From Paraphysomonas bandaiensis (Eukaryota > Protista > Chrysophyceae): a stretch of DNA of 64,000 bases. The stretch lies in contig CBFFRP010000076.1 in NCBI GenBank assembly GCA_965644295.1, positions 1-64,000 of the forward strand, read 5' to 3'. The notes beneath the pieces were generated by a model. The model worked only from the letters and a program-made list of their open reading frames with translations, did no database searches and was not told the DNA's origin. Positions 1-62,840 of this stretch are shown one piece after another (the stretch's first letter is position 1; each line of letters opens with the position of its first letter). The position numbers and the translations under genes were made by a program.

Positions 1-1257
1 GTTACGTATTGCTTCATAATTCTTTCTAAGGGTTACGACGAATTTTGGAGAGGTTTCTTTCGTGAACCCCTGCGTGAAATCAGCAGTGGAAGAAAGCAAG
101 GACAGGACCGTTGAGTCATATTCATATGTATATTCAGAGAAAATATCTTGTGATATCAGAGGAGGTTCTGGGCTCTCACGACTTGTCATAGGCGTCTTAT
201 AGTCAGCAAACGAAATCTCTAAGGAGGATAGGGCAATAGAGTCCCCAGAAGACATGCGGGAAGTACGTACTCTTCGTAAGTCTCGTAGATTTGACTTCGT
301 CACACTCGAATGCGATACATCTACCACAAACACCCCTCTTTCTCCAATAACCTTTCCTACCCGGCGCGTCCACGGGCCTGTGACAACCAGAGCTGTATTC
401 TCATCAACCCCATATGCCACCATCTCCCCCACAGGGTGCGATATAGTGTCAACCACAAGTGATACCAAACGACCCTGTCGACCACGATTGGCGAAGTGAG
501 TGTCAATTAGACCATAGGGGAAAAGCCCTATGCCCCCTGGGCCATAACCGGAGAGTTTATTTGGATTTGGAAGTTCCGCGGTGTACCAGAATGTCGTTGT
601 GCCATTCAATATACCAGTGTATGACACTCCTCCTGTTATCATTGTATGGCTTGTTTGGACATCAGTACCTGCCGAGGTACCAGCAACTACACCCCCCGTC
701 TCAAGTAATGTCTCCTTGATGGCCATTAAAGCATCAGATGGCTGTTTCTCATTATTGTTGTAAAAAGAGTATATAATTCTAGATTGATCCCCACCACCAA
801 AAACAAATCCGGAAAGGGTTTTAATGTGCGCGATGACACCAGGGTCAGTGTTGTTACCTTTCGTGTCAACAGTAACAGGAATATAGTAAACTTCAGCTGC
901 CCCGTACTTAGTTAACAGTTCTTGGTAATAAACCCAGCTTGAATCTTCGTTACAACATGGGTTTTCCGAAGCGGCAGATATAACTCCAAATCGAGCCTTT
1001 CCAACCCCTCCGCCTGCACAGATATTCATCATTCATGTTACCACAACAACGACAAGTGCCAACCTAAACCAATGATTGTGTTCCAAATTTCATAGTTATT
1101 TTCATCCAGCCCTCCACCTAATGACACAGGAATAAATACATTATACAACCATAAGATTAAATCTACCGACTAAGACGAGGCTATAATTTTTTCCAGTGAA
1201 CGAGGCGTAACAGACAGCAATAACAGACAGCAGTACATACACGGACGCCTTGACCAT
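1..1257 (-). CDS. Secreted cyanophycinase (peptidase S51, CphB/CphE-like), 3'-partial
   Basis: Manual splicing: exons 1257-1167, 1117-1064, 1013-<1 with GT-AG introns of 49 and 50 nt; frame open to the window edge. Signal peptide MVKASVYVLLSVIAVCYA, then LVLVGGG, ISAAS, FVFGGGDQSRI, VAGTSAG (catalytic Ser), LIDTHFANRGRQGRL (His), YGVDENTAL (Glu). Confidence 0.88.
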
Positions 1258-1352
1258 TGAATAAAGTCTTTGAATAGGAATGGTGCGGTAGATCTGACAC
1301 CATCTGCAGGAAGCTGACAGACGGTCACATTCTCCATACCACAACGTCCATG

Positions 1353-2916
1353 CATACCTACCTACCTACCTACCTACAGTACCTACCTACCTACCTACCT
1401 ACCTACCTACCTACCTACCTACCTACCTACCTACCTACCTACCTACCTACCTACCTACCTACCTACCTACCTACCTACCTACCTACCTACCTACCTACCT
1501 ACATACATACATACATACATACATACATACATACATACATACATACATACATACATACATACATACATACATACATACATACATACATACATACATACAT
1601 ACATACATACATACATACATACATACATACATACATACATACATACATACATACATACATACATACATACATACATACATACATACATACATACATACAT
1701 ACATACATACATACATACATACATACATACATACATACATACATACATACATACATACATACATACATACATACATACATACATACATACATACATACAT
1801 ACATACATACATACATACATACATACATACATACATACATACATACATACATACATACATACATACATACATACATACATACATACATACATACATACAT
1901 ACATACATACATACATACATACATACATACATACATACATACATACATACATACATACATACATACATACATACATACATACATACATACATACATACAT
2001 ACATACATACATACATACATACATACATACATACATACATACATACATACATACATACATACATACATACATACATACATACATACATACATACATACAT
2101 ACATACATACATACATACATACATACATACATACATACATACATACATACATACATACATACATACATACATACATACATACATACATACATACATACAT
2201 ACATACATACATACATACATACATACATACATACATACATACATACATACATACATACATACATACATACATACATACATACATACATACATACATACAT
2301 ACATACATACATACATACATACATACATACATACATACATACATACATACATACATACATACATACATACATACATACATACATACATACATACATACAT
2401 ACATACATACATACATACATACATACATACATACATACATACATACATACATACATACATACATACATACATACATACATACATACATACATACATACAT
2501 ACATACATACATACATACATACATACATACATACATACATACATACATACATACATACATACATACATACATACATACATACATACATACATACATACAT
2601 ACATACATACATACATACATACATACATACATACATACATACATACATACATACATACATACATACATACATACATACATACATACATACATACATACAT
2701 ACATACATACATACATACATACATACATACATACATACATACATACATACATACATACATACATACATACATACATACATACATACATACATACATACAT
2801 ACATACATACATACATACATACATACATACATACATACATACATACATACATACATACATACATACATACATACATACATACATACATACATACATACAT
2901 ACATACATACATACAT
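1353..2916. repeat. Compound microsatellite: (CTAC)n ~1355-1500, then perfect (ATAC)n ~1501-2916
   Basis: Directly visible; source of the spurious YIHT/MYVC ORFs. Confidence 0.99.
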
Positions 2917-2983
2917 GCAGACCCTCTTGTACACCACCACATCATATATATTGTAGCTCATTAAGGTACAACCAAATACAAGT

Positions 2984-3442
2984 ATGCACGCCAGGTCTCT
3001 GTTTTCTTTGACGGTTCTTATAATTGCATCGGTTAGCGCCAGTGACGTGGTGACCTTAACTGTGGCCAACTTTGATGAGCACACGAAAGCTACCACCGGT
3101 GACAATGGGTCATGGCTCGTCGAATTTTATGCGCCTTGGTGCGGTCATTGCAAAAAGCTTCAGCCAATCTGGGAAGAGCTCGCAACTAATGTGAAGGGAT
3201 CGATCAATGTTGCTAAGGTGGATGTGACAGATAATCGCGATCTGGGTACACGTTTTGGAATCAAGGTATTCGTATTTGCGAAAAATTTGGTACGCAGTTG
3301 TTAATATAATATTCAGGGATTCCCAACAGTGAAATTTTTCCATGAAGGCTCTGTGTATGACTACAAGGGGGCAAGGACTGTTGCTGCATTCAAGGAGTTC
3401 GTAACTGATGGGTTTACCAAAACTGAAGGTAAACGGCTCTAA
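2984..3442 (+). CDS. Thioredoxin-domain (PDI-family) protein with signal peptide
   Basis: Exons 2984-3265 and 3317-3442; WLVEFYAPWCGHCK active site; GIK|GFPTVKFF and YKGART restored across the intron. Confidence 0.92.
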
Positions 3443-3640
3443 GCACTTCTTTTTTCTACCCAGTATATCCAGCTTACTTTGGAATCTGCGGAGATATGAT
3501 AATAATAATAAGAAGAAGAACTATATTGACATCTGCACCATGTTGAGCTATGATACTGTTTAATGATACTACAGCGTAGAGCTCTCAATACATTCAGTTA
3601 TTGAATTTAAGGCGTAGTTGGCACTCTATATATATTAAGT

Positions 3641-6620: not shown

Positions 6621-6749
6621 TTCAGTGCCTGAATGATTGTGCGTGGGTTACCGCGTAGTGCCTATTTACAAAAACAGAAACAAAAACAAAATCGATTGCC
6701 TTGATGACTTCCTTGTCCATCATCCTAAGTGTGTGGGGTTTGCGATTTG

Positions 6750-13083: not shown

Positions 13084-14889
13084 TTATAATTCAACCTCTG
13101 CTATGGTTTGCCCTTGCATCACCAAAATACCATCTCCGACATGTTCATTTTCGTGATGTGGAGGATTTGGGGAGTTCACAGGTGCCACTGCAATGGTGGA
13201 AACATACGGCACCTTTTTCCCAATCCTTGCCCATCTACGCTTGCACTGAACCGGGGTCCTAGTGCCCCCCATATGATCACTAACTAAAGCCCAAGGAGTC
13301 CCGTCACGACCGTCCCCTCCACCATATAAAGCAAAAGCATCTGTCAGTTTCTTGTCCTCGTCTGGTGTCCAAGGACCAACCTGTCGATCTCCCGTTGTGC
13401 GGTACTTTACTACTTCCCAGCGGTTATAGCACTGCTTCAATGTGCGACTTGGAACTAACTCAGTTACCATAGACCAATTGATGCCGTTCGACGGCCCAAG
13501 ACCCATGGCTCGTTTTACTGCATCAGCAAGTGCTTGATCCTCTTCCGTGGTCCATACCCCGCTACGAACTTTGTCGTTCCCAGTAGACTTTTCAGCCCAT
13601 GCCTGTGTGCTAGACTTCAACTCATGAGCCCCAAAGGGGGAATTCACCTCGGTCTCGGTTGAACGGGACGCGGACGGGCTACTATGGTAGTTATCCTGCC
13701 CTACAATCTTCCATCGTTGTCGGCACTCCGTATGGCGTCGCCCACCACCCAAGTGATCTGCCACTCGCCTCCAAAAGGTCGTTGACTTACGGCTGTCCAT
13801 ATCACAGCTCTTAGCATGCCCTTCGATCAGCCTTGCATCCTCCTCCTTACTCCACGGGGGAGTTGCCTTGCAGCGCAGAATTTGCCACCGAGTGTAACAC
13901 TGCTTCACATTACGCTGTCCATTCATCAGCTCAACAACATCAGACCATTTTACAATGCCGTCTTCTTCTCCACCACACTTCTCCACACTATCAACCAGGA
14001 GTTCGTCTTCTTCTTCAGTCCATATACCTTTCTTCACTTCAGAGTTCGATGGCAGCGAGAGCGAATCACCTTTGTCTGTTAAATGTAATCGCGCCCTCTT
14101 ACGTGCCCGATAATCAGTTTCCATGGTCGCCAGGGCTACGTCAGTGTGCTTATATACTAGTACGTTGTGCCACCGCCGCCAGCACTGGTCGATAGTTCGC
14201 ACATTTCCAAGATGTTTGCATACTTCTGCCCACGCTATGTTGCCATGTGAAGTCTTGCCTTTGTACAAGCTTACAGCTTCCACAAGCGCCTCGTCCTCTT
14301 CCTCCGTCCAGGGGCCGTTATTTTTGTGACAACCATCCACTTCAAGCAGCCTATTGTACTTCCGGCGACATTGAGATGGATTGCGAGCACCTTGAAGGTG
14401 CTCACTAACTCTCTGCCAGTCTGTCGAACCCTTCTTACTTGCATGCCGATAGAGCTGTACTCCCTCCTTCAACTTGTCGACTTCTTCAACCGTCCAAGTA
14501 GTTGATTGTTGAGTGCCCTCCGGTTGACGGAACTTGAGGACTGTGTTCCATCTCTGGTTACACTGCACACGAGTTCGTTTCTCGCCCATCGACTCACTCA
14601 CATCTCCCCACGACACCGAACCACTCGAGTTCGAGTGCTGTTCTACAGCCGCTATGAGCTGCTCATCCTCTTCCTTGCTCCAGGGACCCATTCTATAAGT
14701 GCTTCCATTCGACCTGTATCCGACTGTGTTGCACCATCTAAATGCACACTGATCAGGTGATTTACTACCCACCTCCTCAGACACGCTCCTCCAGCACACA
14801 GACCCACCACTCACGTCCCTTTTCTGAGCAACAACGGATCTTATCAGCTGCTCATCTTCTTCGTTCGACCACACCCCTGCGTTTTTCAT
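13084..14889 (-). CDS. MYB/SANT protein with eight Myb repeats
   Basis: 601-aa intronless ORF with eight W(S/T)xEE(D/V)xxL...W..V.....R...QC..RW-type repeats. Confidence 0.9.
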   Translation of the reverse strand: MKNAGVWSNEEDEQLIRSVVAQKRDVSGGSVCWRSVSEEVGSKSPDQCAFRWCNTVGYRSNGSTYRMGPWSKEEDEQLIAAVEQHSNSSGSVSWGDVSESMGEKRTRVQCNQRWNTVLKFRQPEGTQQSTTWTVEEVDKLKEGVQLYRHASKKGSTDWQRVSEHLQGARNPSQCRRKYNRLLEVDGCHKNNGPWTEEEDEALVEAVSLYKGKTSHGNIAWAEVCKHLGNVRTIDQCWRRWHNVLVYKHTDVALATMETDYRARKRARLHLTDKGDSLSLPSNSEVKKGIWTEEEDELLVDSVEKCGGEEDGIVKWSDVVELMNGQRNVKQCYTRWQILRCKATPPWSKEEDARLIEGHAKSCDMDSRKSTTFWRRVADHLGGGRRHTECRQRWKIVGQDNYHSSPSASRSTETEVNSPFGAHELKSSTQAWAEKSTGNDKVRSGVWTTEEDQALADAVKRAMGLGPSNGINWSMVTELVPSRTLKQCYNRWEVVKYRTTGDRQVGPWTPDEDKKLTDAFALYGGGDGRDGTPWALVSDHMGGTRTPVQCKRRWARIGKKVPYVSTIAVAPVNSPNPPHHENEHVGDGILVMQGQTIAEVEL

Positions 14890-14945: not shown

Positions 14946-15176
14946 ATGTATGTATGTATGTATGTATGTATGTATGTATGTATGTATGTATGTATGTATG
15001 TATGTATGTATGTATGTATGTATGTATGTATGTATGTATGTATGTATGTATGTATGTATGTATGTATGTATGTATGTATGTATGTATGTATGTATGTATG
15101 TATGTATGTATGTATGTATGTATGTATGTATGTATGTATGTATGTATGTATGTATGTATGTATGTATGTATGTATG
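14946..15176. repeat. (GTAT)n = (ATAC)n microsatellite
   Basis: Directly visible perfect tract of ~230 bp between two divergent genes. Confidence 0.99.
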
Positions 15177-19917: not shown

Positions 19918-20520
19918 GCCTCAATCATTAAACACACAAAACACTGTGATCAGATGTTCGAAAGAGCAGCTCTCTATCTTATTCAACCTCTTCGCTGACT
20001 GAGGAGTTGGTAATGATGACGGTCATAGCTGCCTAGTCGGCCAATAATACTTCATACACTCCACACTAGTCGCAATGGTAGAGCTTAGGGTGGTAGATAT
20101 GCTGCTGATAACATTGTTAATTGTTCACTGCAGAGATTTAAACAATATGCAGCGTTCAATATTTCCAGATTTTTACAAAAATTACGGCTTTTACGATATC
20201 AATAAAATCTCTCACACAGCATGGAGCATGCCAATAAAAACGGCATCCTGCAGTACGATCTCTAGATGTGCATATTTTTCCCTGACCGTTAACTTGCCCA
20301 ATCGCAATATGTTAAAGCTTTATTCCTATCAATGATTGGTCAATTAGTATCAGTTTTAGCGGGAGCGGATACGGTTGTGGTTGCGTACACCAACACTGCT
20401 ATGGCGTACTCTGATGATACCATACCTGCCGCTACATTGGTGTCTGCTGCAAGCATCAGCAAATAGGAATAATTGTCACGCCGAGCTACCTCTACGTTCG
20501 TCTCAGAGATACACTCAACA

Positions 20521-23431
20521 ATGATTGTTACCTCTCTACTTGTTTGGGTATTCTCCTGCACTGGACTAATCGTTGAAGCCTTTCCAGAACAGAGCAGTGC
20601 GTTATTTGAGAAAAATAAGGAGTTCACTGTTTTCACAGCCAATAGTAATGGACCTGTATTTGGCTCTGAACAGTGCACAATTTTGGAGGGTGCGCCCTCT
20701 GGAAATAAGAAGCTTTACTTCGAACAAGGAATCGTTCAATTGACAAGAGATGCCACTGGAAGCACTCTCAGCGCACGGATTAAGTCTGTACTACTTCGCG
20801 GTGGCCTTAGTCGCAAACGAACCACTATTAGCTTTGCATTTAGCGATTCCCATGACGAGGTGATATTCAAATATTCACAGAGTTTGTACAGCGACTCTGA
20901 GTACATCGCGATATCTGGGAACGACAAAAAGTTTAAAGCCTCCAATGGCCTGATTCATGTTAACTTTGATGTTCTTGTGCACATAGACCTTTTTAATTTA
21001 CCAGTCAGTAGTGGCACGAACTCCAGCATTGCCTTAACCCCTGGCGAATCGTATTATTTTGAGCTACAAATATTGGAAGATGCGAGGGAAGGGCGAGATC
21101 CAGGACTCGTAGAATGTGTGCGTGTGGCAGGTGTGTATACTGGACTTGAATCGGACTGTCCGCCCATATCAAACGCATCTACTCCAACTATACACAATGA
21201 TTACATAACCAATGTGTATAATATATTGGCGTCGAATTCGTCGAATAAGGTGGCGTACAACGTAAGAGACTTTGGTGCCGTTGGAGATGGAAACACAGAT
21301 GACACTTTTTCAATACAAAATTCCATTTATGCTGCAGCAGAGTCTGGTGGGGAGGTGCAATTTCCCGAAGGGAGGTACTACACAACTTCTCCTATTTACC
21401 TTCCGAGTGGTGTTACGATATCTGGACAAGGACAAGGGGCCAACCCTCGCGACATGAGTGGGCTACTTGGAACAGTGCTTATGTACAGGGGCTATGAGTA
21501 CGCACTCGTACTTGAAGGAGACTTGATTACGGTGCAAAATATGGCAATATATGACGCAGGTACGTGGAGCCTCTCTCACATCGTGTATATTTTTAAGCTT
21601 CTTTGTAGGCATTAACGGTGGCACTGCGTCTGGTGGAATTTTACTTAATGCTAATGGCCGATACCTCGAGAGTATACAATTTCGAGGTGTGCTTGTATAT
21701 CGGTTCACTAATGGAACGGGGCTGAAGTTTTGGGCTGATAACGGCGGTGCAGTGACATACTCGTCATTTTATGACGTTCGAATTAGGTATATTTATGTCC
21801 GTGTGATGAGTATCGCTATATCGATTAGCACGAACAGCACTAGCTAAAGAAATAGCAGTACTATCAGCGCTCAGTAGATTTATGTAGTTAGGTACTTAAC
21901 TGACTTGAAAAATTGTGTATATAATTTTAGGTAGACATTTTCGTTGTGGTGCTATGTAATGCTTTGTAATATTGTCAGGAACGCCAAAGTAGGAATGCAC
22001 CTCCATGCCACAGGGACTGCAAGCTCATTCATCAACAGTAACAGTTTCTACCGAGGTGCAATATCCGGAGGAGGATTCGACTACGGTTTGAAACTGGAGG
22101 GACCAGGTGACTGTTACTCTCTATCTCGATTTGTATCTTGATTTTATTCTCTGATATACCGCAATGTATTCATATGAAAAATTGAATATACATATATGAG
22201 TTATGCGCTTCTAAAATGTTGATGGTTCAGAAGTTTTATCGTTGGATAATTTTATTTTCTAGGTGCTGTTAATAATAACAATTTCTATGGAATCGTCATT
22301 GAGCCGTATACATCAACCTATGGACACTTGTATGTGACAGGTGCCATGAGTCAAATCAATGGACACCACATCCGCATTGAGGCGCTGCATCAGCCAGAGT
22401 CTACTCCAATGATTTACTTCTCTTCAGAAACATATGGCTCGTCGTTGTCTGGTTTGTTTTCGCATGGATTGATAGATGTGAATCGCCTTGCTCATGACGT
22501 GGACATTGCCACTGGAAAGTATGTAGGTGCAAGTTATTCTAACAACAACGAATTCTCTAATGGGGGCTTCCGTGGCGTAGTTCCCAATGATGGGGCATAT
22601 GGTATACCCGAATGGTCCCTGACTACAATTCCATCCAGTAGTGCAGATATGGTAAATATATCTGTCAGAAATGAGCGGCAAATCATTGGCGAGCATAATG
22701 TTATCCGTATTTTGATTCCACCCTCTACTTCTGTAATTTTTGAACCGGCTAACGCCCCTCAGCCAGCTGTTGCATCTTTGTATCGCACAGCGTCTTTTGG
22801 AATGTATGTCCGATACTCTGACGTCCTTATGCATACACACAGTAGTGTTTATGCTACCTTTGACACCAGTGAATCAGCAGTAACAACTTCTCAGGTTCAT
22901 CCTGGTGACATAGAGTGGGTATTCGTAAGCATGATTGGCCTCATACCCGAATCAGCATCTCAGCTATCTATTTATCCCCGATTTTATTTTGAAAACACCG
23001 ACAGCACTTTATACACTGAATTAGAGGTTACACTACCATCCTTCTCGTGGGGAGAGAAGAGTCCTGAACCGGAAAGTGGTGCAATACGCGAATCTGGAGG
23101 GAAGATGTTCGGTACTTTGTCCACAGCGGTAGTGCGGCAGACAGTTCCACCCCCATCATCTAATTATTATATTTTGCCCAAAGATGGGAATGTTTTCATA
23201 TTCACAAGTGCTTATACGTACCCAACGATATCTCGCATCAATTACAGTGGGACAGATAGATTTCCTGAAGGCACAGTGATTACTCTCCTCTTTATGGTAT
23301 CCGGTGTCAGCGTCAGTGATAGTGTGTACGTGAATATACGATCAGGCTTCACGAGCACAAGTCATTGCTCAATCACTCTATTAGCCTTAGATTCTGGTAC
23401 ATGGGTTGAATTGGGTAGAGATGGTGTTTAA
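20521..23431 (+). CDS. Secreted beta-helix protein (Pectate_lyase_3/GH28-GH55-related fold)
   Basis: Signal peptide MIVTSLLVWVFSCTGLIVEA; YNVRDFGAVGDGNTDDTFSIQNSIYAAAESGGEVQFPEGRY; Asn/Gly-rich beta-helix rungs; four exons at approximately 20521-21559, 21609-21786, 21979-22106 and 22263-23431. Confidence 0.8.
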
Positions 23432-26220: not shown

Positions 26221-29200
26221 TCATGACGCAGGTGGTTCAGGTCGTGTAGCAATCCACCACAGGGTGTTGCTTCTGCTATGCCCATTACCCCCAGCCCCCT
26301 CAAAAGAATTCTCGCTCAATGCATTGACTCCCTTCCATGCTCCACGCCAATCCCCTGCTGTTGCTTGGGAGGCAAGAACAAGCACACTCCAACCCTCCGT
26401 TTGACAAGCTATATTAAATAATTTCACGCAATCAATAAACAGTATCAATATAAAGTATCAGTCGCATTACCTATATCAGACGAACAAGTTTCGTTAAACA
26501 CAGGAAGCATCTCCCGTATCCACTCCACATCATCTCTATCCTCCGATGCCACAGTAATTGGCAGCAACTGAGTAATTGGCGCATGATGATCATGAAAGCC
26601 AAACTATAGAAATACACTGACCTGAATGCCATAACTCTTCCAAGCCTCATTTCCAAACCATGTCTGTTCCTGTGCCAGCATACTCCACAACATTCCAACA
26701 ACTTTTGAAGTATAAACATCTGCATTAGACGGAAGTTAGTTTCAAAAACCCAGTAGCGCAGAACAGAAAGCGCACAAGAATATTATTGACACTATACACT
26801 GAAAATTGTCAATGGAATATCAATGCCACACACCTGGATATATCCTTGTGACACCTTTGGCACCAACAGAGCGGACATGCCAGTAGCTTTGAGCAGATCG
26901 AATCTCCGTGGCCAACAGTAGACGACCCATTTCATATACACGCTGACATACATCATACCGAACATTATCTTCTAGATTGGCTGACCCTGTAGAAATTTTT
27001 ACGGTTACGTACATTTATTACAACTACAAACATATCATGGTAGCTTGCATCGTGTATAATACCATAACAGCACAGTTACAACAAGTAATGTTGTCGCTAT
27101 TCGCATATTCTGCATCATTCATTACCACTGAAAACGGCAGAAGCCCCAAGGCCATACAAAGCCACAGCTTCATACGCAGCAATAGCTTCTGCAGAACTCT
27201 CTTGATTTCTTCCATTCGGGTAGGGTTCATCACCCAGTGTCACGATTCCACTTGCCCAACTAGAACCAAGATACCTACATCCCACCATGTTAGAAATCGC
27301 GTCTGAAACTTTTCGTAATTAATAATTTCTACAGAGTACAACAATTCAAATTGTAAATATCGCACCAATCTTTGTGTCTCCATGTTGGGAAGAACGGATC
27401 CTCATGAGATGGGTTGGCAATGTCTCGAATCATTACCAGGACACGGTCATGGTACTCTCGCACCCATGATGGCTCGAGCTTGGCAAGTACAGCAGCTGCG
27501 TATATGTGATATCCATAATGGAAGTGGTGATCGTTATAACTGCATACAGATTAGTAATTAATAAAAGTCATACAAGTTATATTTCCATAAATATATACTC
27601 ACAATCCTGATCCGAAATTCTGCCCGGGGTCTTCCAGGGTTGGGCATTGAGGGTAAGAATTGCGACACGAGTATGTTTCTGGCTCATAGTCACATCCACA
27701 CCCCACCAGCCCCCCCCATGTGTCATCATACACCAGAGCAGATAAGGAAGATCCGTTAAGCCACACCTCTGCGCTCTGTTTCAAGTGTTCCAAGGCAGAT
27801 ATATATAGGCTAGACACTCGCGGGTTTTCATCATCAGGTACATGAAATCCTGGGCAAAATATATACAACAAATCATATAACATGCTAGTTTGTGGACGAG
27901 AAATATACATACCAAGTTGATTAGCTATTATCAAAACACGGGCAAGTCTGGCGAGCATTTTTCCGCTGAAGTATGTGTCACCCGCGCCTTTCCTGTAGTT
28001 CAGCGGCAGTCGAAATGACAAGTCGTTTATAAGAGCGGATCGTATATCTTCCACCATTTCAGTGCGAATAGGGTTTTTCGCGTAATAGTTAACCTCATGC
28101 AGGGGTTCATGCATGTCCCATGAGTTACCAATAACAGGGCATGCTTGCCCATGAAGAGTTGGTACACAACCTACTGCTAGCACCTGAGCAACACAAAAAG
28201 GAGCCTAAAATAGAGTGTGTGCTGATGTACGTTCTACCTTATTAGTGGATCCAACTTTGGGGTGAATACGAGCCTAAATTACAAATCATATGAACACATA
28301 ATACAAATGTCTACAGGATGTTCACAACCTGATGATGAGGAAGTGCAAACATCAAAAGTTCTGACTCAGCTTCTCCGAAACTCGATAACTTCGGGTACTC
28401 AGGCGGACCAGAAGGGTTGACATCAGGATCATCGTACTCAAATCCCACACCACCCTTGGATAGTGATTTCTCTAAGCGCTCATGCCACGCCGACATGGTC
28501 GTGGGAGACCAGTCGAAGTGAAGATCCAACATTTCATCAGGCGTTTGTTCACTGGGAAAAGTAAAGCTCACATCAGCCCTACCTATACTGGTTATAAGTT
28601 GATGCTTGGCGCAAAAATAGAAGAAGTATACCTGTTGGAAACACATCTGCATGATCTCTCAGTACTTTCATAAATGCACTTTGATCTGTCGGGTGTTTGT
28701 CAGTGCAGTGAATACTGTTTACCCCATTTGTACAGTTGTTTCCAAGTGCTACACGTACTATTACACCAGGGTAAAAACTCTCTATTGAACGCAACTCAAA
28801 CGAGGCTTCTTGTGGAACATCTGGAAGAACCCCTGGTGGAAGGGTGGGGTCGGGCTGCGGCTCTCCAGTGGAAAAGCACACAAAACGCAATGGTTTGGAC
28901 ACAAACACCAGCCACGTAAAGTCACTTCTTTCAAATGTTATCTCTAGCTCTCTGTTGACAATAATGGGCTCAGGATTAACTGTATCGTTGCCACACTGCA
29001 ACCGTATATTGCCATCCACTAGAGGCAATGATGCAAGCGCCCGGCGGCCTATAATACGTGGCGAGGAGCGCACATACTCCATTGTCACGTATGGGGCTCC
29101 GCGGACTATATGGCTTCTCATTCCGCCACTAACTACCGACGTTTCTTCGTCTTCCACTCCATTAGAAGTACGATTTCTCATATCTTGATTCATGTAGTGC

Positions 29201-29802
29201 CACTCCAGTACTAACGAGAGACGTGAAGCAGCCGAATAAGGCACAACTTTGTGCTGCTCGTGAAACTGTTCTACTGCACCTATAGTCAAGGAATTCTCAT
29301 CCTCATACGTCATCATTACAGCACGGTCGTTGGCTTGTACATGCGGGCCATTCACTTCAATGCCGGGAATAATGCCACCAGTACCAAGAATATAAGGAAC
29401 TTGGAACACTTTGTTAGCTTTTCCTGTATTAGTTTTTCCAAGGATTAAATTTTGGCACCAACTGTTGGTCGGTAGAGGACGCGAGTTATCATACAGTCGC
29501 TCTAGTATCGGGCCTGGCATGCTACTATCGGGTCTGCCTATATCCAAAAACCCGATACTGCGCGGGTCCTCCACACTGTAAGGTTCACACACAGAGCTCC
29601 AGGCAGCCCGTTCATTGACATCGCTATGAGAGAATGAAACTAATGAATAGGAGCTGATTATGACCGTCAGGATCAGCACACCACAAGCCCAAAGATGAAT
29701 AGTCTTCCCACTGGTCTTCTCTCGTCCTCTATCCACTAACAGGGCATGTATGGGCAATGTCTTCCTCTGAAGAAGAGGTGATAGCTCATTGTTCCCTCTC
29801 AT
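26221..29802 (-). CDS. Endo-1,3(4)-beta-glucanase, glycoside hydrolase family 81, with N-terminal membrane anchor; multi-exon
   Basis: PLPTNSW, DTYFSGKMLARLAR, YDDTWGG, NFGSG|YNDHHFHYGYHIYAAAVL, RDIANPS..DPFFPTWRHKD, WYLGSSWASGI, NGRNQE, TEIRSAQSYWHV across spliced exons. Confidence 0.9.
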
Positions 29803-31152: not shown

Positions 31153-32843
31153 CTAGATGGCATTGTCGTCAGACGGATCTGCGAGGACAGCTGTTGTCCT
31201 TATCTCTTCAGCGAGAGCAGCAGTCGGGTCACGGGATTCAGTGTCGTCAGTATGAGAGTTACCATTGAGTTCACTATCCATTGCTTTAGACTCCTCGGCT
31301 GGCAACGTGAATTCTGCGTTATTGGTATCAATATATATCCATTGCAATAATGCATTATCATAAACACCTCATTCAAGACAAAAATACATCTAGAGATCTA
31401 GTCCTACCTTTAGACTCCTCAGTGCCACTCGCTTCCGTAGCTGGTAGATCTTGGGATTTACTTTCGCCCCCAAACATGGCATTCATTCGGTTAATTGCAA
31501 TGACAGCGTTGGCAGCCGCTCTCAATCTCTTAAGGCGCTGATACTTTCGAAGACTGGCGAGACTATCGTTCAGACTATGCTGGGCCAGCTCAGAACCATC
31601 TCGTGTGATCTGCAGATACACCGCAAGCCGAATTAGAAAATAAAACTTCTACAAGTACAAGAAAATATAGCGAAAGCACAGTAGATCATGGCGCACATAG
31701 CAGTATGGGTGAAATTCGTACCCATGGGTGGCTCAACACTTGGTCTACGGTGAGTCTCTTTGTGGCATCTATTTCGAGCATTCCACGAATAAGATCTTTC
31801 GCTTCTTCGGTTACCGAGGACCAATACTGCTCGTGAAAATCATATTGAGCCTTTTTTATCTTGCGGAACATCTTCTTTTGGTTTTCGTCATCGAATGGAG
31901 GATATCCACCAAGCAACACAAACATAATCACACCTACAAACATGTCAGTTCCAGCACAGTCATACCCATACAACTAGAAATGCTACAGTATCAATACCAC
32001 CCCATTAGCAAAGACATGACTTTCATACTTACCCATCGACCACATATCAACTGAAATGTCGTACGCCTTGCCGGTGATGATTTCTGGTGCGACGTAGTGT
32101 GGAGTACCCAACTGAGTCCTCAGTGCACTCTGACCGGCCCCCTTTATGGCAAATCCGAAGTCTGCAATTTTTAAATTTAAATCGTTCTCATCGCTACTTG
32201 TCAACAGCAGGTTTTCTGGCTTCAAATCTCGGTGGGCGATTCCTCTATCGTGGCAGTACTTCAGTGCCTCACACACGACGCGGACGACATCTCTGGCCTC
32301 TTTCTCGTTGAAAGATGTTTTCTTTACGAGGCGGTCGAAAAGCTCACCTCCTCGGACAAACTCAAGAACCACATAGAAATGTTTTTTCTCTTCAAAGAAA
32401 TCAAACATCCTGACAATGTTGTCGTGCTCAAGGGAACGCAGAATCTCAACCTCTGATCTTAGAGCCTTCTCGTCATCTGGAGGTATACCAAAGCGATCGA
32501 TAATTTTAACAGCCACCTCTTGGCCGTTTTCTTTGTGTACCGCTCTGTGGACAATAGAAAACGCACCCTCTCCGAGCTGCGAGTGTGGTCAGACAAACAT
32601 AACTTAGAGGGCGATGCAGAACCTTTTCACCCTGCTGGTATACACTGCGAAACTTCGGTTTAGCGTTCTCTATATCACCAGGAGCCTTTGGTGTCTTCTT
32701 AGTGTTCTTCTTATTCGTCTTATTCTTCGTCGACCCCTTTGTATCTGCTGCCTTTGCTTTATTGTTGTCGTCACTCTGTTATCATATGTATGACTCAAAC
32801 TATGATGATGTATATATAAAACACTCACCCAAGTGCAACCCAT
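31153..32843 (-). CDS. CaMK1-like Ser/Thr kinase A, predicted N-myristoylated
   Basis: 15-nt first exon MGCTW|SDD; LGEGAF, VAVK, HRDLKPEN, DFG, APE; CaM-binding tail KRLRAAANAVIAINRM; extra acidic last exon. Confidence 0.9.
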
Positions 32844-33372: not shown

Positions 33373-34747
33373 ATGGGGTGTTCACAGGTATATATATATT
33401 TATGATGGTGATAATGTAATCGACTGTGTGTTGTGCTATCGTCCAAACAGAGCAACACAGCTAATGATAACAATTCCAGCCCGTCGGATATTAATACATC
33501 CGAGAAGAGAGAGCTAAAAAAACTGTATAAGATGGGCGATGTGGTATGTATGCACAAGGTGTGATGAGTTTTCTGATTTTGTTTCAGCTCGGTGAGGGGG
33601 CCTTTTCTGTCGTCAAGAAAGCGACTCACAGGAAGACTGGGAATGACGTCGCAGTGAAGTGTATTGACCGAAATGGTTTACCTGATGAAGATGAGGCGGC
33701 ATTGAGGCAGGAAGTTGACATCTTGCGCTCTCTAGATCACCCCAACATTGTCAAGCTGTTTGATTTTTTCGAAGAAGATAGATACTTTTATGTCATTCTT
33801 GAGTTTTTACCGGGGGGTGAATTATTTGACAGCATTGTCAAAAAAAGCTTTTACAATGAGAAGGAAGCACGAGATATTGTTCGGATTGTATGCAATGGTT
33901 TGAAATACTGTCACGACCGTGGGATCGCTCACCGAGACTTAAAACCAGAAAACCTGTTGCTTACAAGCAATGCCGACGATGCGAGCGTAAAAATTGCTGA
34001 TTTTGGATTTGCTATAAAGGGTGCTGCCAAGACCTCGCTAACCACACAGTGTGGAACTCCGGGGTATGTGGCGCCCGAGATCTTAAGTAGTAAACCATAC
34101 GGAAAGGCTGTTGATATGTGGTCGATGGGTACGTGACATGAGTGATATATGAGAATACCACTGGGTGTAATACTTGTACAGGTGTGATCACGTACATACT
34201 ATTGGGTGGATATCCCCCCTTTCATGATGACAATCAGAAAGCCCTCTTTCGTAAAATCAAGAAGGGCGACTTCGAGTTCCACGAGGAGTACTGGGGATCC
34301 GTGAGCGAGGAGGCAAAGGATCTTATCAGGGGGATGCTCCGAGTGAATGCTGAGGAGCGCTTGACCGTGGACCAAGTTCTCACTCATAAATGGGTACGTT
34401 ACTATGTATTCATAGTGGAAGAGATGAGCTGTTGTGGTGGCCTCTCACTAAAATTTGGTTGTGTATTACCTCCCACGTTAGTGTTTTGTATATGCTGCCC
34501 GATACTAAAACATGATTTCGAGTTGGCGATATGTAATCACTTTATCTAGATTCATCGCGATGGTGATGAACTGGCTTCTCATAATCTAAATGATAATCTG
34601 GCCGAACTTCGAAAATACCAAGCCACGAAGCGTTTCAAAGCTGCCGCTAATGCTGTCATTGCAATTAATCGTATGAACAATATGTTTGGGGGCTCATCTG
34701 GGAAGAGTGAAGAAGTGCAGCAAGCCGAGGAAGTGGAGGACAACTAG
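33373..34747 (+). CDS. CaMK1-like Ser/Thr kinase B, predicted N-myristoylated
   Basis: 15-nt first exon MGCSQ|SNT; LGEGAF, HRDLKPEN, DFG, TQCGTPGYVAPE; tail KRFKAAANAVIAINRM; last exon 34550-34747. Confidence 0.92.
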
Positions 34748-37789: not shown

Positions 37790-37999
37790 TGGACTTGTAT
37801 TTTTTACCCTACAGTTGAGAATCTTCTCTCATATGACTATCATGATATTGATTGCAATATATTGCAATATATTGTGAGCCACTTTAACAGAAACAATATT
37901 GATGGGATTTTTGGCCGGTCGAGCAATCAATATATTTTACAATATATTGCAATATATTGTACAATGTATTGAAATTCAATATATTGTTTCCTAGCCCTG
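37790..37999 (-). repeat. Family C terminal fragment
   Basis: Reverse complement of 35363-35520, ending GTTTCCTAGCCCTG; another remnant lies at ~61230-61350. Confidence 0.7.
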
Positions 38000-48522: not shown

Positions 48523-50988
48523 TTATGTTGTGTGCGGAGTATCCGGTGGTGGCATTGTCGTCCACTCATAGGTGAAACAGTCTGGCTGACCTCTATGCGA
48601 ATATATGATAGATGGATGCCTGCCTCGTCTTTTCGATCCTTTATACTCTGCATCACTACTTCGCAGAACTCTTCTCCTAGCACTGTGTCCTTGATTCTGC
48701 AGACTCTTGATGTAGTCTCCAATAGTTCCCACTATCCTACCTCGAAGATCAGAATAGAAATCATTCTGTGTAGACTGGAATTCACTCCAGCAGAAGGGGG
48801 GTTGAGAATCTGTTGTTGGTCCTTGTTGAACCAGGATCTCGATAGCATTTAAACTGGACGTATTTCGTTGAACATCTGCTCGCAGAATTGATGACACCTT
48901 GGCATCTACAGCCCCGAAGGCTCTCATCTTCAACTTGTCTTCCTGCAAGTCCTCTCGACAGGCTATGCTTTCACACGCATCCCCTATAGACTCCTCATCC
49001 TCCTGGAAGTGATTGTATCGCAAAAGTACCTGTAGTCCAGTAATATTTTGTACCATCCCATGAAGTCGACGAAATAGTCGTGCACGGGGGCAGGTTGAAT
49101 AGCAGTTGCGATCTGCAGCAAATGAAGTCGAAGAGGGACCTGAAGAGATACATAGGTTCGTAGATTATATTGAAATATATGTATATATACCGTTAGCCTC
49201 CACAAAATTCTTTCGGGTGGTCTCGCAGAATGCTGTGTTGCCAGAGTACTCAGACATGTCAGAAAAGAAGGGTTCATTGTAGGAGGCCCAATACGTGTGA
49301 GTCTACAATCATGAATTCATCAGCCTCTTAGTCATGCAAATACACCAGTTCAACCATGCATACCAAAGCAATTACACAGATGCATATACACCTGTTCAAC
49401 CATTCATACCAAAGCAATTACACAGTCGCAGGAATGAGAATCAATTCTGTACAGACCCACCTTTAAGTGCTCAGTGAGGTCCGCCGATTGTATCATACCA
49501 GGCATTTCTTCAAGTACTGTGAGTAGCCCATCTTGCACTCCATCTCTTTCGGAAAACCGAGCCATGTCAACAACCATCCATTGATTCGCATAAGTACCCG
49601 AGTGGTCATATGAAAATCGCCTCGACCAATCGTTTCCGTCTATTGCCATGAGGTTTGCTGACCTAACGCGCACCCAGCTCAACAGGGAAGCTGGTTTAAT
49701 AAGTGCATACAAGGAGGAATTGTGGTTATCTAGAGAGGTTTCCATGACGGCTAGCCGTCCACCAGAGGAAGAGCAGGGGCAGGTCTGGCGACGAGGGACG
49801 GTATAAGTGGTATAAAAGTCATCCACAGACGTGAGCATACCAGGAGACGAGGAAAAGTAGGTGTGTGGCCGCAAAATACTTCTTGGCCCTTCACAAGCAC
49901 ATTCACTCTCTGCGATACCCTTCGGCCAGCTGGGGAAGATGTAATGTTTAAATATGCGGGGACCCATATTACGGTAGTCGTCCCAAGTGTTGTGACCAAA
50001 CAGTACATCAGAGCCGTCAGGTAGCAACTTTACGATAGCAGAGCAGTGGTCTCTCCGTCGATCACTAACTGTTGACACTCCACCTTCACCATTGATTCCA
50101 GTAGTTCGACGTCTATCATGTTGCTCAGCTGAGATCTTTTCCATAATCTGAATGAGATCACCATTGCTGTTTAACAGCAGGAACTGAATAACTGTGGGGG
50201 CTTTGAGACTCGTATAAAGGGTATCGATTCCTTCGTCGAATTCCTGTTCCCCACCGACCAGTCTGCCATCTTGAAACCCTGCAACGACGCCTTCCAACTG
50301 TTGTACAATCCCGCATACAGTCAACCAGTGTGCACTGTCATTACATCGCCCTTTAGACTTTGATATCATCCACTGATAGTTCTCGAGTAGGAATGAGATG
50401 ATAGCCGGATCGGGGTCCACAGGATTGGGTTCCACTGTATCGAATAGACCTGCGAGCAACAACAATCAGAAAAAAGTAAAGGCATGTGGGCTATAACACA
50501 CTCTGATAGTAATTCGGATAAAAATCAGCGATCTGTCGCCAGGTCAAGAAACCTTCCAAATAACCGATTGCTCGCATAGACAGGAGATACTGCTCCACTG
50601 AATCATCAGCAGGCAATGTTTCGACCTCGAGGTAATTCCACCCTTGACCTTCCACATTGCTGTGAAACTTTCCACTTGCAATTGCATTAGATCCCAAGTA
50701 TCCCAGCATGATCTGATGGGCTGACGTTAAGGTAACACTCATATCATATCAGACACTCACAGCAAACGATTCAGTGCTTTTATCATATCGAACACTCGCA
50801 GTGACCGTTTCTTCTGGAAGCATATCTTGAGTCACGTCTATCTTAAGGAAGGAGTCATATGAGAGCAGGAGCAGCAGAACAATAGCGAAGATGAGAGTGC
50901 CGGCACACATATTAATATGCCGCACATGTTTATGCGCTCCTCTCGAAGCGTGAGGCCCGATAAGAGGTGATGCCTCACTCAACGGCAT
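48523..50988 (-). CDS. Phospholipase B-like protein (PLBD, lysosomal Ntn-hydrolase); multi-exon
   Basis: GWNYLEVET, GYLEG, DHCSAIVKLLPDGSDVLFGHNTW, FSSSPG..SVDDFY, METSL, SGTYANQWMVVD, LRYNHF, IACREDL, GAVDAKV, GPT, HRGQPD. Confidence 0.92.
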
Positions 50989-59553: not shown

Positions 59554-59661
59554 GAAAGCAATCATAAGATACCAATACACGATAATCGGTGAGCGAAACA
59601 ATCACCAGCCCTTCGATACATATTACCCATACCAGTTATATGATGGGCGTTTATTGAGAGC

Positions 59662-59695
59662 AGAGTAGAGTAGAGTAGAGTAGAGTAGAGTAGAG
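59662..59695. repeat. (AGAGT)n pentanucleotide microsatellite
   Basis: Directly visible in a divergent intergenic gap. Confidence 0.9.
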
Positions 59696-60006
59696 GGGAG
59701 GGTCACTTGGATCTATTATGTAGGACTACCATACGTATATCTATATATACGGTATACACACCACTGTACTACGCACCTTTATAAAAAAACGGTTGAGTTG
59801 TAAAAACTGAAATTTATTGTGTCTATTGAAGCTGCAGAGGGAGAATGATTGATTGACCGAAACCTGTTGAATGAAATGAATAAAATAAGAGGAGACATCC
59901 ATCCACATGAGCGGTCTGTGTATGTGTATGTATGGGCATAATGCGAACCAAGAACACTTGAATAGTAGGCATTTGCTCCGCATTCAGACATAAATATATA
60001 TTGACA

Positions 60007-60995
60007 ATGCAAGAGGCATTATTATTGAATAACGAGCACTTACCTGCAATCAGGCTTCATGCCACTGCAGTTTTCGGTATATTGAACAGTTTCATGAGAA
60101 GAGAAGACAGGCATTCCAGAGTGATTGGCACACTGCTAGGCGTGTCTCAAGAGGGATACATCGATGTAATACCTTATTCATTTAGTGGCGGGAAGCATGT
60201 GTTTATGTATGTTTGGCAGGTAATGGACAGCTTTCCTGTTCGTCATGTGGAGAAGAGCGATGAGATATATGTTGCCATCAATAAAGAGGACCACAAAAAG
60301 ATGTACGGTTTTCATAAGCGTATTAACCGTAAAGAAGTAATTGTTGGGTGGTATACTACTACCCTCCCAAATTCGGCGCTTATTGTTGACAACTCTTCAC
60401 TTATTCACGAGTTTTATAGCCATGAATGCAGAGATCCGATTCAGCTTGTAGTCGATACCAACTTGAGTTCAGGGACGGATAACATTGCTATTAAGGCTTT
60501 TATTAGTCAACCCATGATTGTTGGCACACATGCACTGGCGAATATGTTTCAAGAAATTAAAGTGGAGGTCGTAATGTCGGAGTCAGAGGTAACATTTGTG
60601 TGGTAATATTTGATTACAATAAAATGTTTCTGCAGGTGGCCTGCATCAATCACATGATCAAGGGTCAGGACCCTCGCACAGCCTTCTCCAGCAGTGAAAT
60701 TATATCCACCATCAACAGTCCAGCTACTGAACTAGTTAACTCCGTCTCACTGTTGGTAGATCTTGTGGATAAAGTTAGCGTTTATGTGTCTGAGGTCGTC
60801 AGTGGAAAAAGAGAAGCAGACCCCGAGGTGGGGATCATGCTCGCTGATATCATGAGTTCCTTGCAAGTGGTTAGCCCCGAGGATTTCAAAAAGTACTTCG
60901 ATAGCAAGACTCAAGACATGCTTATGGTATCTTTTCTTTCAACACTAACTAAAACTCAACTTGCTGTCGCGGAGAGACTGGTTCGGGTTCTCTGA
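60007..60995 (+). CDS. EIF3F: Translation initiation factor 3 subunit F (MPN domain)
   Basis: RVIGTLLG, VMDSFPVRHVE, EVIVGWYTT, LIHEFY, PIQLVVDT, QDMLMVSFLSTLTKTQLAVAERL; two introns, the first in frame. Confidence 0.9.
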
Positions 60996-61652
60996 GTAGC
61001 CATAGCTGTGGTAAACAGTCGATGATAGTGAGTAACTTAGCAGCTGTTAATATTACTTTCATTTGGCTGTAAAGTGAAGTATAATTTGAGAGTTGAATAA
61101 TAATATCGTGTTCGTAAACCCGATGAACTGTATCATTAATTGTACTGTAGTCATTTGGTTTTTACTTTAACTTGCCGGATGACAAAGAGTCACGTAGAAT
61201 GGCATGTATAATGTATACTGCATACCAGAGTTAGGGAACAATATATATTTATTGGTGGATCGGCAAAATATTCCATCAACACTATTTCTGTTAAAGTAGC
61301 TCACAATATATTGCAATTTTAATAGGAAGCTTCTCATCTGTAGTGCAAAATATAAGTCCATGATATTTAATATTTATAGAGTTGTAAGACAATTGAAATT
61401 AGTGTGAATAAAAGCTTCGTACTTTAAAGTGAAAAAATATTTTCAAAACCAAATTAGCACACAAGCACACAACTATACGAATGTCACCACTACTAAATCC
61501 ACGTATTATACAAGGTTCAGTTCTTGTCAACATTACAATACTATTGCATAAATCTTATGGTATAAAATAATAATGAAGCCTGTAAGAAATTTAAATTCGA
61601 CGACATATACAATATACACCTATTCGTGAATGTATACATTACTACTGATCAT

Positions 61653-62840
61653 TCAATTTTCTTCTTCATAAGTTCCTCTTACGACTTGAACACTGTCTCT
61701 AACATGCCACCTACCCATGGCCATCACATCCCGAATCTCTCCGTCTTCCTCTAACACTAATAAATCTGCATCGAAACCTTCCATTACTCGTCCCTTGCGC
61801 GGAAGTCGCAGGAAGTCTGCTACATTAGACGTGAGCATTGGAAGCACGACTGAGATCTCCCATCCCTCTCTCCATATCTTTAGGAGGGTTTCATGTAGCG
61901 TACATGCAGTACCGACCCCCATAGAGAGCAATGTTCCACTTCCGTCGAATATCGGCAAACTTCCCCCACAGTCCGAGCTGACGGTAAGCAAGTGCGCCGG
62001 AATTCCTCGTGTAAGCGCAAGAGAGATGGCCTCGGTGGCTGACCACCCCCTACCCACGACCGACTGTGGAAATGCGGTGATGTCCCCATGCATCCCATGC
62101 TGCGACATCAGCTCGCAAGCCTGGTCAAAGAGTGCTCTATTCCTATTAATGTGAGTGGGGTGGAACACCTTCGCGGGAAGTTCAGTCTCCGTTATGGCTC
62201 GTTGCACCATATCTAACCGTCTTTGACCCTCCCCCATGTGAAGATGCAATACACCCGCCTTGCCTGACAGCAAGCCTCCGACGTAGGCGTCACTGGCGAG
62301 ACGTACTAACTCATCGTACGTTGGCTGGCTCGATCGGTGATCGCTCAAGGCAAACTCACCAATTCCAATAACGGGCTCGATATATAATATATCAGACTTG
62401 GCACTGCCTGTGAGAGTAGTCAGTGGCAGGTGGTAGCCTCCAGTCCAGCAGAAAGCAGACATGCCTTCTTGTCTAAGACCATACACACGTGATACCACAT
62501 TTCCAGTAGACCGAGTACTGTCGTCGGTACCAAGCAATCCGATGACTGTGGTGACCCCAACGCTAGTAAACTGGCTAATTTGTACTTGAGGGACCTGAGT
62601 GGCAAATCCCCCCTCCCCCCCTCCACCGGTAATATGTGTGTGACAATCGATATATCCAGGAAACACCATTCTTCCACCCAGATCGACCACCTCCACCGAT
62701 ATACCGCTAGGTGCTTCGAAAGGCGAATCACTGAGTGCAAGAATCCTTCCTGCCCCTATCAGGATCGACTTAACCCCCTGTGGTTCAGGGGAGTACAGGT
62801 CCGCGTTATTTAAAACAATCAGTGACGCTTTATCACTCAT
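61653..62840 (-). CDS. iadA: Isoaspartyl dipeptidase (beta-aspartyl peptidase, M38 amidohydrolase)
   Basis: Intronless 395 aa: PGYIDCHTHITGGGGEGG, GVTTVIGLLGTD, WTGGY, GIGEFALSDHRSSQPT, HLHMG, PTHINRN, SSDCGGSLP, KGRVMEGFDADL. Confidence 0.95.
   Translation of the reverse strand: MSDKASLIVLNNADLYSPEPQGVKSILIGAGRILALSDSPFEAPSGISVEVVDLGGRMVFPGYIDCHTHITGGGGEGGFATQVPQVQISQFTSVGVTTVIGLLGTDDSTRSTGNVVSRVYGLRQEGMSAFCWTGGYHLPLTTLTGSAKSDILYIEPVIGIGEFALSDHRSSQPTYDELVRLASDAYVGGLLSGKAGVLHLHMGEGQRRLDMVQRAITETELPAKVFHPTHINRNRALFDQACELMSQHGMHGDITAFPQSVVGRGWSATEAISLALTRGIPAHLLTVSSDCGGSLPIFDGSGTLLSMGVGTACTLHETLLKIWREGWEISVVLPMLTSNVADFLRLPRKGRVMEGFDADLLVLEEDGEIRDVMAMGRWHVRDSVQVVRGTYEEEN

What the first reader, a model, noticed from the sequence alone, without database searches (positions are those of the whole stretch)
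1..62840. Both steps of cyanophycin catabolism (cyanophycinase + IadA) encoded in one eukaryotic window
Seen: a spliced, signal-peptide-bearing S51 cyanophycinase (1257 to <1) and an intronless IadA-type isoaspartyl dipeptidase (61653-62840), both with intact catalytic motifs. Established: bacteria degrade the nitrogen-storage polymer cyanophycin with cyanophycinase to beta-Asp-Arg, then with an isoaspartyl dipeptidase (IadA/IaaA/CphZ) to Asp + Arg. Inference: this protist may harvest nitrogen from cyanophycin granules of ingested (cyano)bacteria, using a food-vacuole or secreted depolymerase plus a cytosolic dipeptidase (no signal peptide), both probably acquired from bacteria. I know of no characterised eukaryotic version of this pathway. 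The genes are ~60 kb apart with unrelated genes between, so the linkage may be coincidental.
Basis: partly seen in the sequence, partly recalled or inferred. Interest (0 to 1): 0.9.

Follow-up and report, generated by a model that had tools for sequence, protein, structure and literature searches.

The report
Cyanophycin-digesting enzyme pair in bacterivorous protist
A marine bacteria-eating protist carries real genes for both enzymes that bacteria use to break down their nitrogen-storage polymer cyanophycin, one from an old and apparently unstudied eukaryotic family also found in mussels, water fleas and lampreys, the other taken later from bacteria; their 60-kb closeness is probably chance.

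Summary
Both genes are real, intact and on the minus strand. The host is a marine chrysophyte (Paraphysomonas according to unchecked earlier scan notes).

The spliced S51 gene is a secreted CphE-type cyanophycinase, not PepE. It keeps the Ser-His-Glu triad and the D-T-H..R-x-R-x-x-R pocket. It is no recent bacterial gift: it belongs to one eukaryote clade (100/99) with chrysophytes, Pelomyxa, molluscs, Daphnia, crab, hemichordate, amphioxus and lampreys.

The intronless IadA is a later, separate transfer. Four eukaryote-like copies form a clade (97/95) inside bacteria whose iadA sits in cyanophycin operons. Two other species appear to hold both genes, with different neighbours.

The 60-kb linkage is unsupported as a cluster: unrelated genes lie between, there is no synteny, and a polyA sample holding the cyanophycinase transcript has no IadA contig.

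Best reading: the cyanophycinase digests prey cyanophycin to beta-Asp-Arg, and a promiscuous cytosolic IadA can finish the job. No activity was tested. Cyanophycinase-like annotations and one fungal transfer are already on record; I found no functional study. The scan noted a second cyanophycinase-like gene elsewhere in this genome (unchecked).

The parts
1167..1257 (-). Cyanophycinase exon 1: start codon, predicted signal peptide (about 18 aa), first strand of the S51 fold
   Evidence: matches the LVLVG motif of full-length homologues
1118..1166 (-). Intron 1, 49 nt, GT-AG, phase 1
   Evidence: absent in relative L091, where exon 1 and exon 2 sequence reads continuously; not checked with reads
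1064..1117 (-). Cyanophycinase exon 2 (54 nt)
   Evidence: matches homologue columns
1014..1063 (-). Intron 2, 50 nt, GT-AG, phase 1
   Evidence: same position in L091 and L127
1..1013 (-). Cyanophycinase exon 3 (runs off the window): catalytic domain with Q76 (786), S113 (675), D170 (504), T171, H172 (498), R176, R178, R181 (471), E204 (402), numbered from the first full codon at 1011, plus the start of the CphE-type C-terminal extension; two N-glycosylation sequons
61653..62840 (-). Intronless IadA-type isoaspartyl dipeptidase, 395 aa: Zn ligands H67, H69, E162, H201, H230, catalytic D290; substrate residues E76, T105, Y136, R169, R233; no signal peptide
   Evidence: DNA support
1349..2916 (.). 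1.57-kb 4-nt microsatellite directly upstream of the cyanophycinase; a possible assembly join between it and the rest of the window
60001..60995 (+). Neighbour of IadA (tail to tail): MPN/JAB plus MitMem_reg gene (eIF3f/Rpn8/CSN6 type), two introns spliced in polyA RNA
63389..64000 (+). Neighbour of IadA (head to head): transcribed gene of unknown family, on the same contig as IadA in an independent data set

Best explanation
Two unlinked genes of different age together give this bacterivore the capacity to digest cyanophycin from prey. Step 1 (sequence shown, activity inferred): a secreted or food-vacuole CphE-type serine exopeptidase (Ser113-His172-Glu204; Gln76, Asp170 and three Arg holding the substrate) clips beta-Asp-Arg dipeptides from cyanophycin granules of swallowed or lysed bacteria. 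The gene belongs to an old clade shared by many microbe-eating eukaryotes. Step 2 (inferred, transporter not identified): the dipeptide enters the cytosol. Step 3 (sequence shown, activity inferred from the characterised Leucothrix mucor enzyme): a two-zinc IadA splits it to Asp and Arg. This IadA was transferred once into an ancestor of this chrysophyte subgroup from a bacterium whose iadA lay in a cyanophycin operon. IadA is promiscuous, so it will also clear other beta-Asp dipeptides from digested prey protein. The 60-kb spacing has no function.
For: Pocket and triad match the characterised CphEal residue for residue, including its Gln-to-Thr change (PMC3235067). Pseudomonas loci with CphEal's size, ribosome site, signal cleavage site and residue spacing fall in the same long-type family. 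The fold search ranks CphB (E 3e-14) far above PepE (1e-6). The three-Arg pocket is kept in 55 of 59 eukaryote-clade proteins. The eukaryote clade has support 100/99 under LG+G4 and SH-aLRT 99-100 under LG+C20. The IadA eukaryote-like clade has support 97/95 inside bacteria with iadA-cphB(-cphA) operons; 20 of 27 further related loci have cphB or cphA nearby. Two more species appear to carry both genes: the IadA and cyanophycinase contigs share samples or a sample series and share dispersed repeats at 94-98%. The cyanophycinase stretch is held by polyA metatranscriptomes. Mice absorb beta-Asp-Arg but do not release Arg (PMC5399006), so step 3 is not automatic in eukaryotes.
Against: No enzyme assay exists for any eukaryotic member. 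IadA had no contig in a polyA sample that held the cyanophycinase stretch and both IadA neighbours (one sample, and contigs do not prove absence). IadA from a cyanophycin operon is not specific for beta-Asp-Arg (PMC10206079). No IadA from Pedospumella, CCMP2298 or MMETSP appeared in the top 120 hits of two searches although they have the cyanophycinase, so most carriers manage without it. Co-occurrence in three related species is expected from shared descent. How often the prey holds cyanophycin is unknown.
Confidence: 0.55

Rival explanations
1. The two enzymes do unrelated jobs. The cyanophycinase may act on cyanophycin, but IadA was kept as a general cleaner of isoaspartyl dipeptides from damaged prey or own protein, and any beta-Asp-Arg is excreted or split by the plant-type asparaginase (IaaA/ASRGL1) family.
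For: IadA is promiscuous and common in bacteria without cyanophycin genes. Most cyanophycinase-bearing eukaryotes show no IadA.
Against: The donor lineage kept iadA in cyanophycin operons. Three of the four eukaryote-like IadA carriers are in species with the closest cyanophycinase subclade. A promiscuous cytosolic IadA would split beta-Asp-Arg whenever the dipeptide reached it.
Confidence: 0.25
2. The eukaryotic CphE-like family has changed substrate and is a general digestive peptidase for other beta-linked or acidic peptides; cyanophycin is not its physiological target.
For: Only about 35-41% identity to bacterial long-type enzymes. Members occur in animals with mixed diets, with some pocket changes (Thr to Ser, Ala or Val; first Arg to Lys in amphioxus). 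Exon 3 scores below the TIGR02069 cutoff.
Against: The D-x-H..R-x-R-x-x-R pocket, described as critical for cyanophycin cleavage, is kept across supergroups. The low TIGR score is for a fragment; full-length oyster and Pseudomonas members pass the cutoff.
Confidence: 0.14
3. The two genes form a selected, co-regulated gene cluster for cyanophycin catabolism.
For: For a pair named in advance, a gap of 60 kb or less has a chance of about 0.15-0.6% in a 40-80 Mb genome (assumed sizes).
Against: At least ten unrelated genes lie between. Neighbours are not shared in the second species, where IadA lies outside a 29-kb cyanophycinase contig. No co-expression in one sample. The pair was picked after the fact from 1,302 windows. 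The link crosses a 1.57-kb microsatellite.
Confidence: 0.04
4. IadA is bacterial contamination or a mis-assembly.
For: It is intronless, 60-65% identical to bacterial proteins, and had no RNA contig.
Against: It is present at flank depth in three independent DNA sets and on one contig with a polyA-transcribed neighbour. GC3 0.50 lies within the window's range. Orthologues lie on gene-sparse, repeat-bearing contigs without cphB and form a clade.
Confidence: 0.02

Closest known systems
Extracellular cyanophycinase CphE of Pseudomonas alcaligenes DIP1 and P. anguilliseptica BI (PMC3235067)
   Same: Signal peptide, long form with C-terminal extension, Ser-His-Glu triad, Gln/Asp/Thr/three-Arg pocket with the same D-T-H..R-x-R-x-x-R spacing; no cphA in the window
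   Different: Eukaryotic, spliced, with glycosylation sequons; about 35-37% identical to Pseudomonas loci of this type; likely works in a food vacuole; activity untested
Intracellular CphB (Synechocystis 3EN0/7UQW; pseudo-CphB 7UQV)
   Same: Same S51 fold (best Foldseek hits, E about 3e-14) and catalytic and pocket residues
   Different: CphB is short (about 270 aa), cytosolic, next to cphA, and has Gln where this protein has Thr; 23-29% identity
Leucothrix mucor IadA (8DQN, PMC10206079) and Colwellia IadA (5XGW)
   Same: Same subfamily with Glu in place of the carboxylated Lys of E. coli IadA; all metal and substrate residues kept; relatives lie in cyanophycin operons
   Different: Nuclear gene of a protist, alone, with no cphB or cphA beside it; expression not shown
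Fungal secreted cyanophycinase acquired from bacteria (Pyrenophora, Trichoderma; PMC3612039)
   Same: Eukaryotic, signal-peptide-bearing cyanophycinase, function untested
   Different: Reported top donor hit Spirosoma; not compared directly here; that paper does not link it to cyanophycin feeding or to a dipeptidase
RefSeq and GenBank 'cyanophycinase-like' proteins of lampreys, amphioxus, hemichordate, molluscs, Daphnia, crab and Pelomyxa
   Same: Same clade and same pocket
   Different: Automatic annotations only; no study found in the paper library; no IadA partner seen
PepE alpha-aspartyl dipeptidase (S51)
   Same: Fold and Ser-His-Glu type triad
   Different: No PepE family hit, far weaker fold match, and this protein has the cyanophycinase-specific pocket

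Membership tests
Cyanophycinase, CphE type (S51) | Ser-His-Glu catalytic triad | tested here: met
   S113, H172, E204 in exon 3
Cyanophycinase, CphE type (S51) | Substrate pocket Gln, Asp, Thr (Gln in CphB), three Arg | tested here: met
   Q76, D170, T171, R176, R178, R181 against CphEal Q136, D222, T223, R228, R230, R233
Cyanophycinase, CphE type (S51) | Cleavable N-terminal signal peptide and long (about 420 aa) form | tested here: met
   Hydrophobic exon 1 judged by eye and hydropathy, no SignalP run; C-terminal extension aligns with long forms; the gene's 3' end is outside the window
Cyanophycinase, CphE type (S51) | Groups with Pseudomonas CphE-type rather than CphB or PepE | tested here: met
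   Trees; fold search. The characterised CphE sequence itself was not available; orthology of L045, L047 and L061 is inferred from the paper's description
Cyanophycinase, CphE type (S51) | TIGR02069 score above the curated cutoff | tested here: inconclusive
   Exon 3 alone 107.5 against 126.6, lacking model positions 1-27; the joined model was not searched
Cyanophycinase, CphE type (S51) | Releases beta-Asp-Arg from cyanophycin | not testable with these tools
   needs an enzyme assay
PepE alpha-aspartyl dipeptidase | PepE family match and absence of the cyanophycin Arg pocket | tested here: not met
   No PepE hit; fold E 1e-6 against 3e-14 for CphB
IadA isoaspartyl dipeptidase (M38) | TIGR01975 above cutoff, full length | tested here: met
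   387.8 against 331.25, model positions 2-389 of 389
IadA isoaspartyl dipeptidase (M38) | Two-zinc ligands and substrate residues | tested here: met
   H67, H69, E162, H201, H230, D290; E76, T105, R233 match LmIadA H64, H66, E159, H198, H227; E73, T102, R230
IadA isoaspartyl dipeptidase (M38) | Hydrolysis of beta-Asp dipeptides; octamer | not testable with these tools
   needs an enzyme assay
Cyanophycin catabolic gene cluster | Cyanophycinase and dipeptidase genes adjacent, conserved and co-regulated | tested here: not met
   60 kb apart with unrelated genes between; no synteny; no IadA RNA contig in a sample with cyanophycinase RNA
Cyanophycin scavenger (degrades but does not make it) | No cphA in the genome | tested here: inconclusive
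   None in the window; no scan note on a synthetase; the whole genome could not be searched

The most novel reading that the evidence does not exclude
Digesting cyanophycin is an old, overlooked ability of microbe-eating eukaryotes: one clade of secreted CphE-type enzymes, from chrysophytes and Pelomyxa to mussels, Daphnia, amphioxus and lampreys, opens a bacterial nitrogen store that the literature treats as accessible to bacterial enzymes only. This chrysophyte subgroup later completed the route to free Arg and Asp by capturing iadA from a bacterial cyanophycin operon.
Probability: 0.45. Interest if true: 0.78.

Novelty: new variant of a known kind. Interest (0 to 1): 0.58.

Why it matters
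Cyanophycin is 26% nitrogen by mass and resists ordinary proteases. The papers read describe CphE enzymes as secreted by prokaryotes (PMC7318851) and show that mice neither digest the polymer nor free Arg from its dipeptide (PMC5399006). If grazers carry their own cyanophycinase, fixed nitrogen stored by cyanobacteria and other bacteria can pass straight into the food web, and prey quality for flagellates, zooplankton and filter feeders would depend on it. The claim is cheap to test: two recombinant enzymes and one feeding experiment. The IadA is also a clean, datable bacteria-to-protist transfer. The genomic closeness that prompted the finding adds little.

Tried and rejected
Pfam gave no hit for exon 3 at E 0.001; this is a sensitivity limit, since full-length members score only 21-29 bits. 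Grouping with PepE was rejected. Joint transfer from one operon was rejected: the cphB beside IadA's closest relatives is the short type, 27-29% identical and far away in the tree. Contamination of IadA was rejected. A profile search and a metagenome scan for more eukaryotic IadAs found none beyond the three already seen; both are limited to the top hits or to two peptide patterns. Run X4 was chosen as a likely RNA run but behaved as DNA, so only one RNA sample was tested. The careful LG+C20 tree of the cyanophycinases did not finish in two tries; the quick LG+C20 and careful LG+G4 trees agree. No AU test was run, so the donor groups are not named. A primer from the CphEal paper matched none of the fetched loci. 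Paper searches for studies of eukaryotic cyanophycinase or IadA found only the fungal transfer and a table row in an abalone transcriptome; the library lacks most subscription papers.
Full report
Observation. The S51 gene starts at 1257 and has two short GT-AG introns (1166-1118 and 1063-1014); exon lengths of 91 and 54 nt keep the phase, and exon 3 stays open to the window edge. Exon 1 reads as a signal peptide by hydropathy (no SignalP available). The second intron lies at the same codon in relatives L091 and L127. The IadA is one 395-codon frame, 62840-61653, with no N-terminal extension over bacterial cytosolic relatives.

Host. Short introns, microsatellites and eukaryotic neighbours show a eukaryote. 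Runs that hold the DNA include marine and seawater samples. The cyanophycinase falls among proteins of Pedospumella encystans and Ochromonadaceae CCMP2298, which points to a chrysophyte. Earlier scan notes call the genome Paraphysomonas, and others call it a diatom; I did not test the genus.

Enzyme 1 is CphE-type. Exon 3 hits only cyanophycinase models and structures. A confident model (pLDDT 89.9) matches CphB structures at E 3e-14 and PepE at 1e-6. The characterised extracellular CphEal uses Ser171, His224 and Glu251 with pocket residues Gln136, Asp222, Thr223, Arg228, Arg230 and Arg233 (PMC3235067). Exon 3 has Gln76, Ser113, Asp170, Thr171, His172, Arg176, Arg178, Arg181 and Glu204, including the Thr that marks CphE against CphB. 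Pseudomonas loci fetched from GTDB match CphEal's description in length, ribosome site, signal cleavage site and residue spacing and belong to the same long-form family. The TIGR02069 score of exon 3 alone (107.5) is under the cutoff (126.6), but the fragment lacks the first 27 model positions, and full-length oyster and Pseudomonas members pass.

Enzyme 1 is old in eukaryotes. Its nearest relatives are about 40 chrysophyte-like proteins at roughly 45-65% identity. These join a further protein on a eukaryotic contig, Pelomyxa schiedti, molluscs, Daphnia, a crab, a hemichordate, amphioxus and lampreys in one clade: 100/99 under LG+G4, SH-aLRT 99-100 under LG+C20 quick searches, and 91-92 in a wider FastTree set. 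The clade nests among bacterial long-type enzymes; Anaeramoeba lies outside it. The three-Arg pocket is kept in 55 of 59 members checked. Either one ancient acquisition was followed by many losses, or it spread between eukaryotes; the trees do not separate these. The named carriers mostly eat microbes or filter water (general knowledge; not tested against the tree).

Enzyme 2 is a later transfer. It passes the IadA cutoff and keeps every metal and substrate residue listed for Leucothrix mucor IadA, including Glu in place of E. coli's carboxylated Lys. Its best hits are bacterial at 60-65% and lie directly before a short cphB, often with cphA; 20 of 27 further related loci do too. The window protein groups with three others (97/95). 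Two of these lie on gene-sparse, repeat-rich contigs without cphB; the third is on a short contig without cphB. Third codon positions are saturated (0.34) while second positions are about 0.8 identical, so the gene has been kept under selection for a long time. In three independent DNA sets it lies at the depth of its flanks, and one contig joins it to a transcribed neighbour. The short cphB of the donor operons is only 27-29% identical to enzyme 1 and far away in the tree, so the two genes did not arrive together.

Co-occurrence and linkage. Two other species appear to hold both genes. L007 (IadA) and L091 (cyanophycinase) come from the same two metagenomes and share dispersed repeats at up to 94%. 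L009 (IadA) and L123-L125 (cyanophycinase) come from what looks like one JGI sample series and share a 91-nt repeat at 98%. This is indirect, and shared descent explains it as well as coupling does. More distant chrysophytes with the cyanophycinase showed no IadA in the top hits. Linkage is weak. BART, Myb, EMC6, glycoside hydrolase, kinase, proteasome, phospholipase B and MPN genes lie between. Neighbours differ in the second species, where IadA is outside a 29-kb cyanophycinase contig. The chance of 60 kb for a pair named in advance is 0.15-0.6% under assumed genome sizes, but the pair was picked after the fact from 1,302 windows, and the link crosses a 1.57-kb microsatellite.

Expression. 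PolyA metatranscriptome runs hold 61-69% of the sampled words of window 1-1340. One of them, laid on 59600-64000, shows both IadA neighbours (one spliced at two introns) and nothing over IadA. One sample of contigs cannot prove silence, but it gives no support for co-expression.

Mechanism. Shown by sequence: a secretory-pathway serine peptidase with the cyanophycin pocket, and a cytosolic two-zinc isoaspartyl dipeptidase. Established for the bacterial families: CphE releases beta-Asp-Arg from cyanophycin (PMC3235067), and IadA from a cyanophycin operon splits beta-Asp dipeptides without preference for Arg (PMC10206079). Inferred: digestion in the food vacuole, uptake of the dipeptide by an unidentified transporter, and cleavage in the cytosol. 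I give the combined reading 0.55. The main rivals are unrelated roles for the two enzymes (0.25), a changed substrate for enzyme 1 (0.14), a true cluster (0.04) and contamination (0.02).

Novelty. The pathway is known in bacteria. Eukaryotic cyanophycinase-like genes are annotated in RefSeq, a secreted fungal one was reported as a transfer (PMC3612039), and one appears in an abalone expression table (PMC4661900). I found no paper on their activity, their shared origin or a eukaryotic IadA. The papers read treat CphE as prokaryotic and show that mice do not free Arg from the dipeptide. I file this as a new variant of a known kind. The interest lies in the eukaryote-wide family and the operon-derived IadA, not in the 60-kb spacing. 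Overall 0.58.

Noticed in passing
P0263, P0261, P0277, P0287, P0266, P0282: Lampreys (four species), a hemichordate, Daphnia, a crab, mussels and Pelomyxa carry CphE-type proteins with an intact pocket; lampreys were the only vertebrates among the hits seen.
   Followed up: partly
P0267 and its 19-row neighbourhood: Anaeramoeba flamelloides has a long-type cyanophycinase outside the main eukaryote clade, with many unlabelled metagenome proteins near it; possibly a second eukaryotic acquisition.
   Followed up: partly
window 1349-2916: A 1.57-kb nearly perfect 4-nt microsatellite starts about 90 nt upstream of the cyanophycinase start codon; a shorter one (231 nt) lies at 14946-15176 beside the Myb gene.
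   Followed up: no
window 61266-61317, with copies near 35421, 37861-37917 and 43361: A short dispersed repeat of very high copy number (depth 5,600-13,000 against 25-90 for flanks) lies between the 3' ends of the MPN gene and IadA; possibly a miniature transposon end.
   Followed up: partly
window 20473-23431 (+), 27602-29802 (-), 48526-50465 (-): Other likely digestive hydrolases in the window: a pectate-lyase-fold protein, a GH81 glucanase and a phospholipase B-like protein.
   Followed up: partly
window 31986-32588 (-) and 33531-34133 (+): Two related protein kinase genes head to head, 68% identical in DNA; an old inverted duplication.
   Followed up: partly
window 13084-14889 (-): A 601-aa intronless protein with at least eight Myb repeats.
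   Followed up: no
L061:1321-7113, L045, L047, L050: Pseudomonas CphE-type genes follow an Arg/Lys/Orn-type binding protein, a porin and a second, longer cyanophycinase-like gene (annotated for L061; similar ORF layout in the others): an apparent cyanophycin uptake locus.
   Followed up: partly
L082, L087, L088, L089: Bacteroidales genomes place a long cyanophycinase-like gene head to head with iadA; these lie outside the clade of the window's enzyme.
   Followed up: partly
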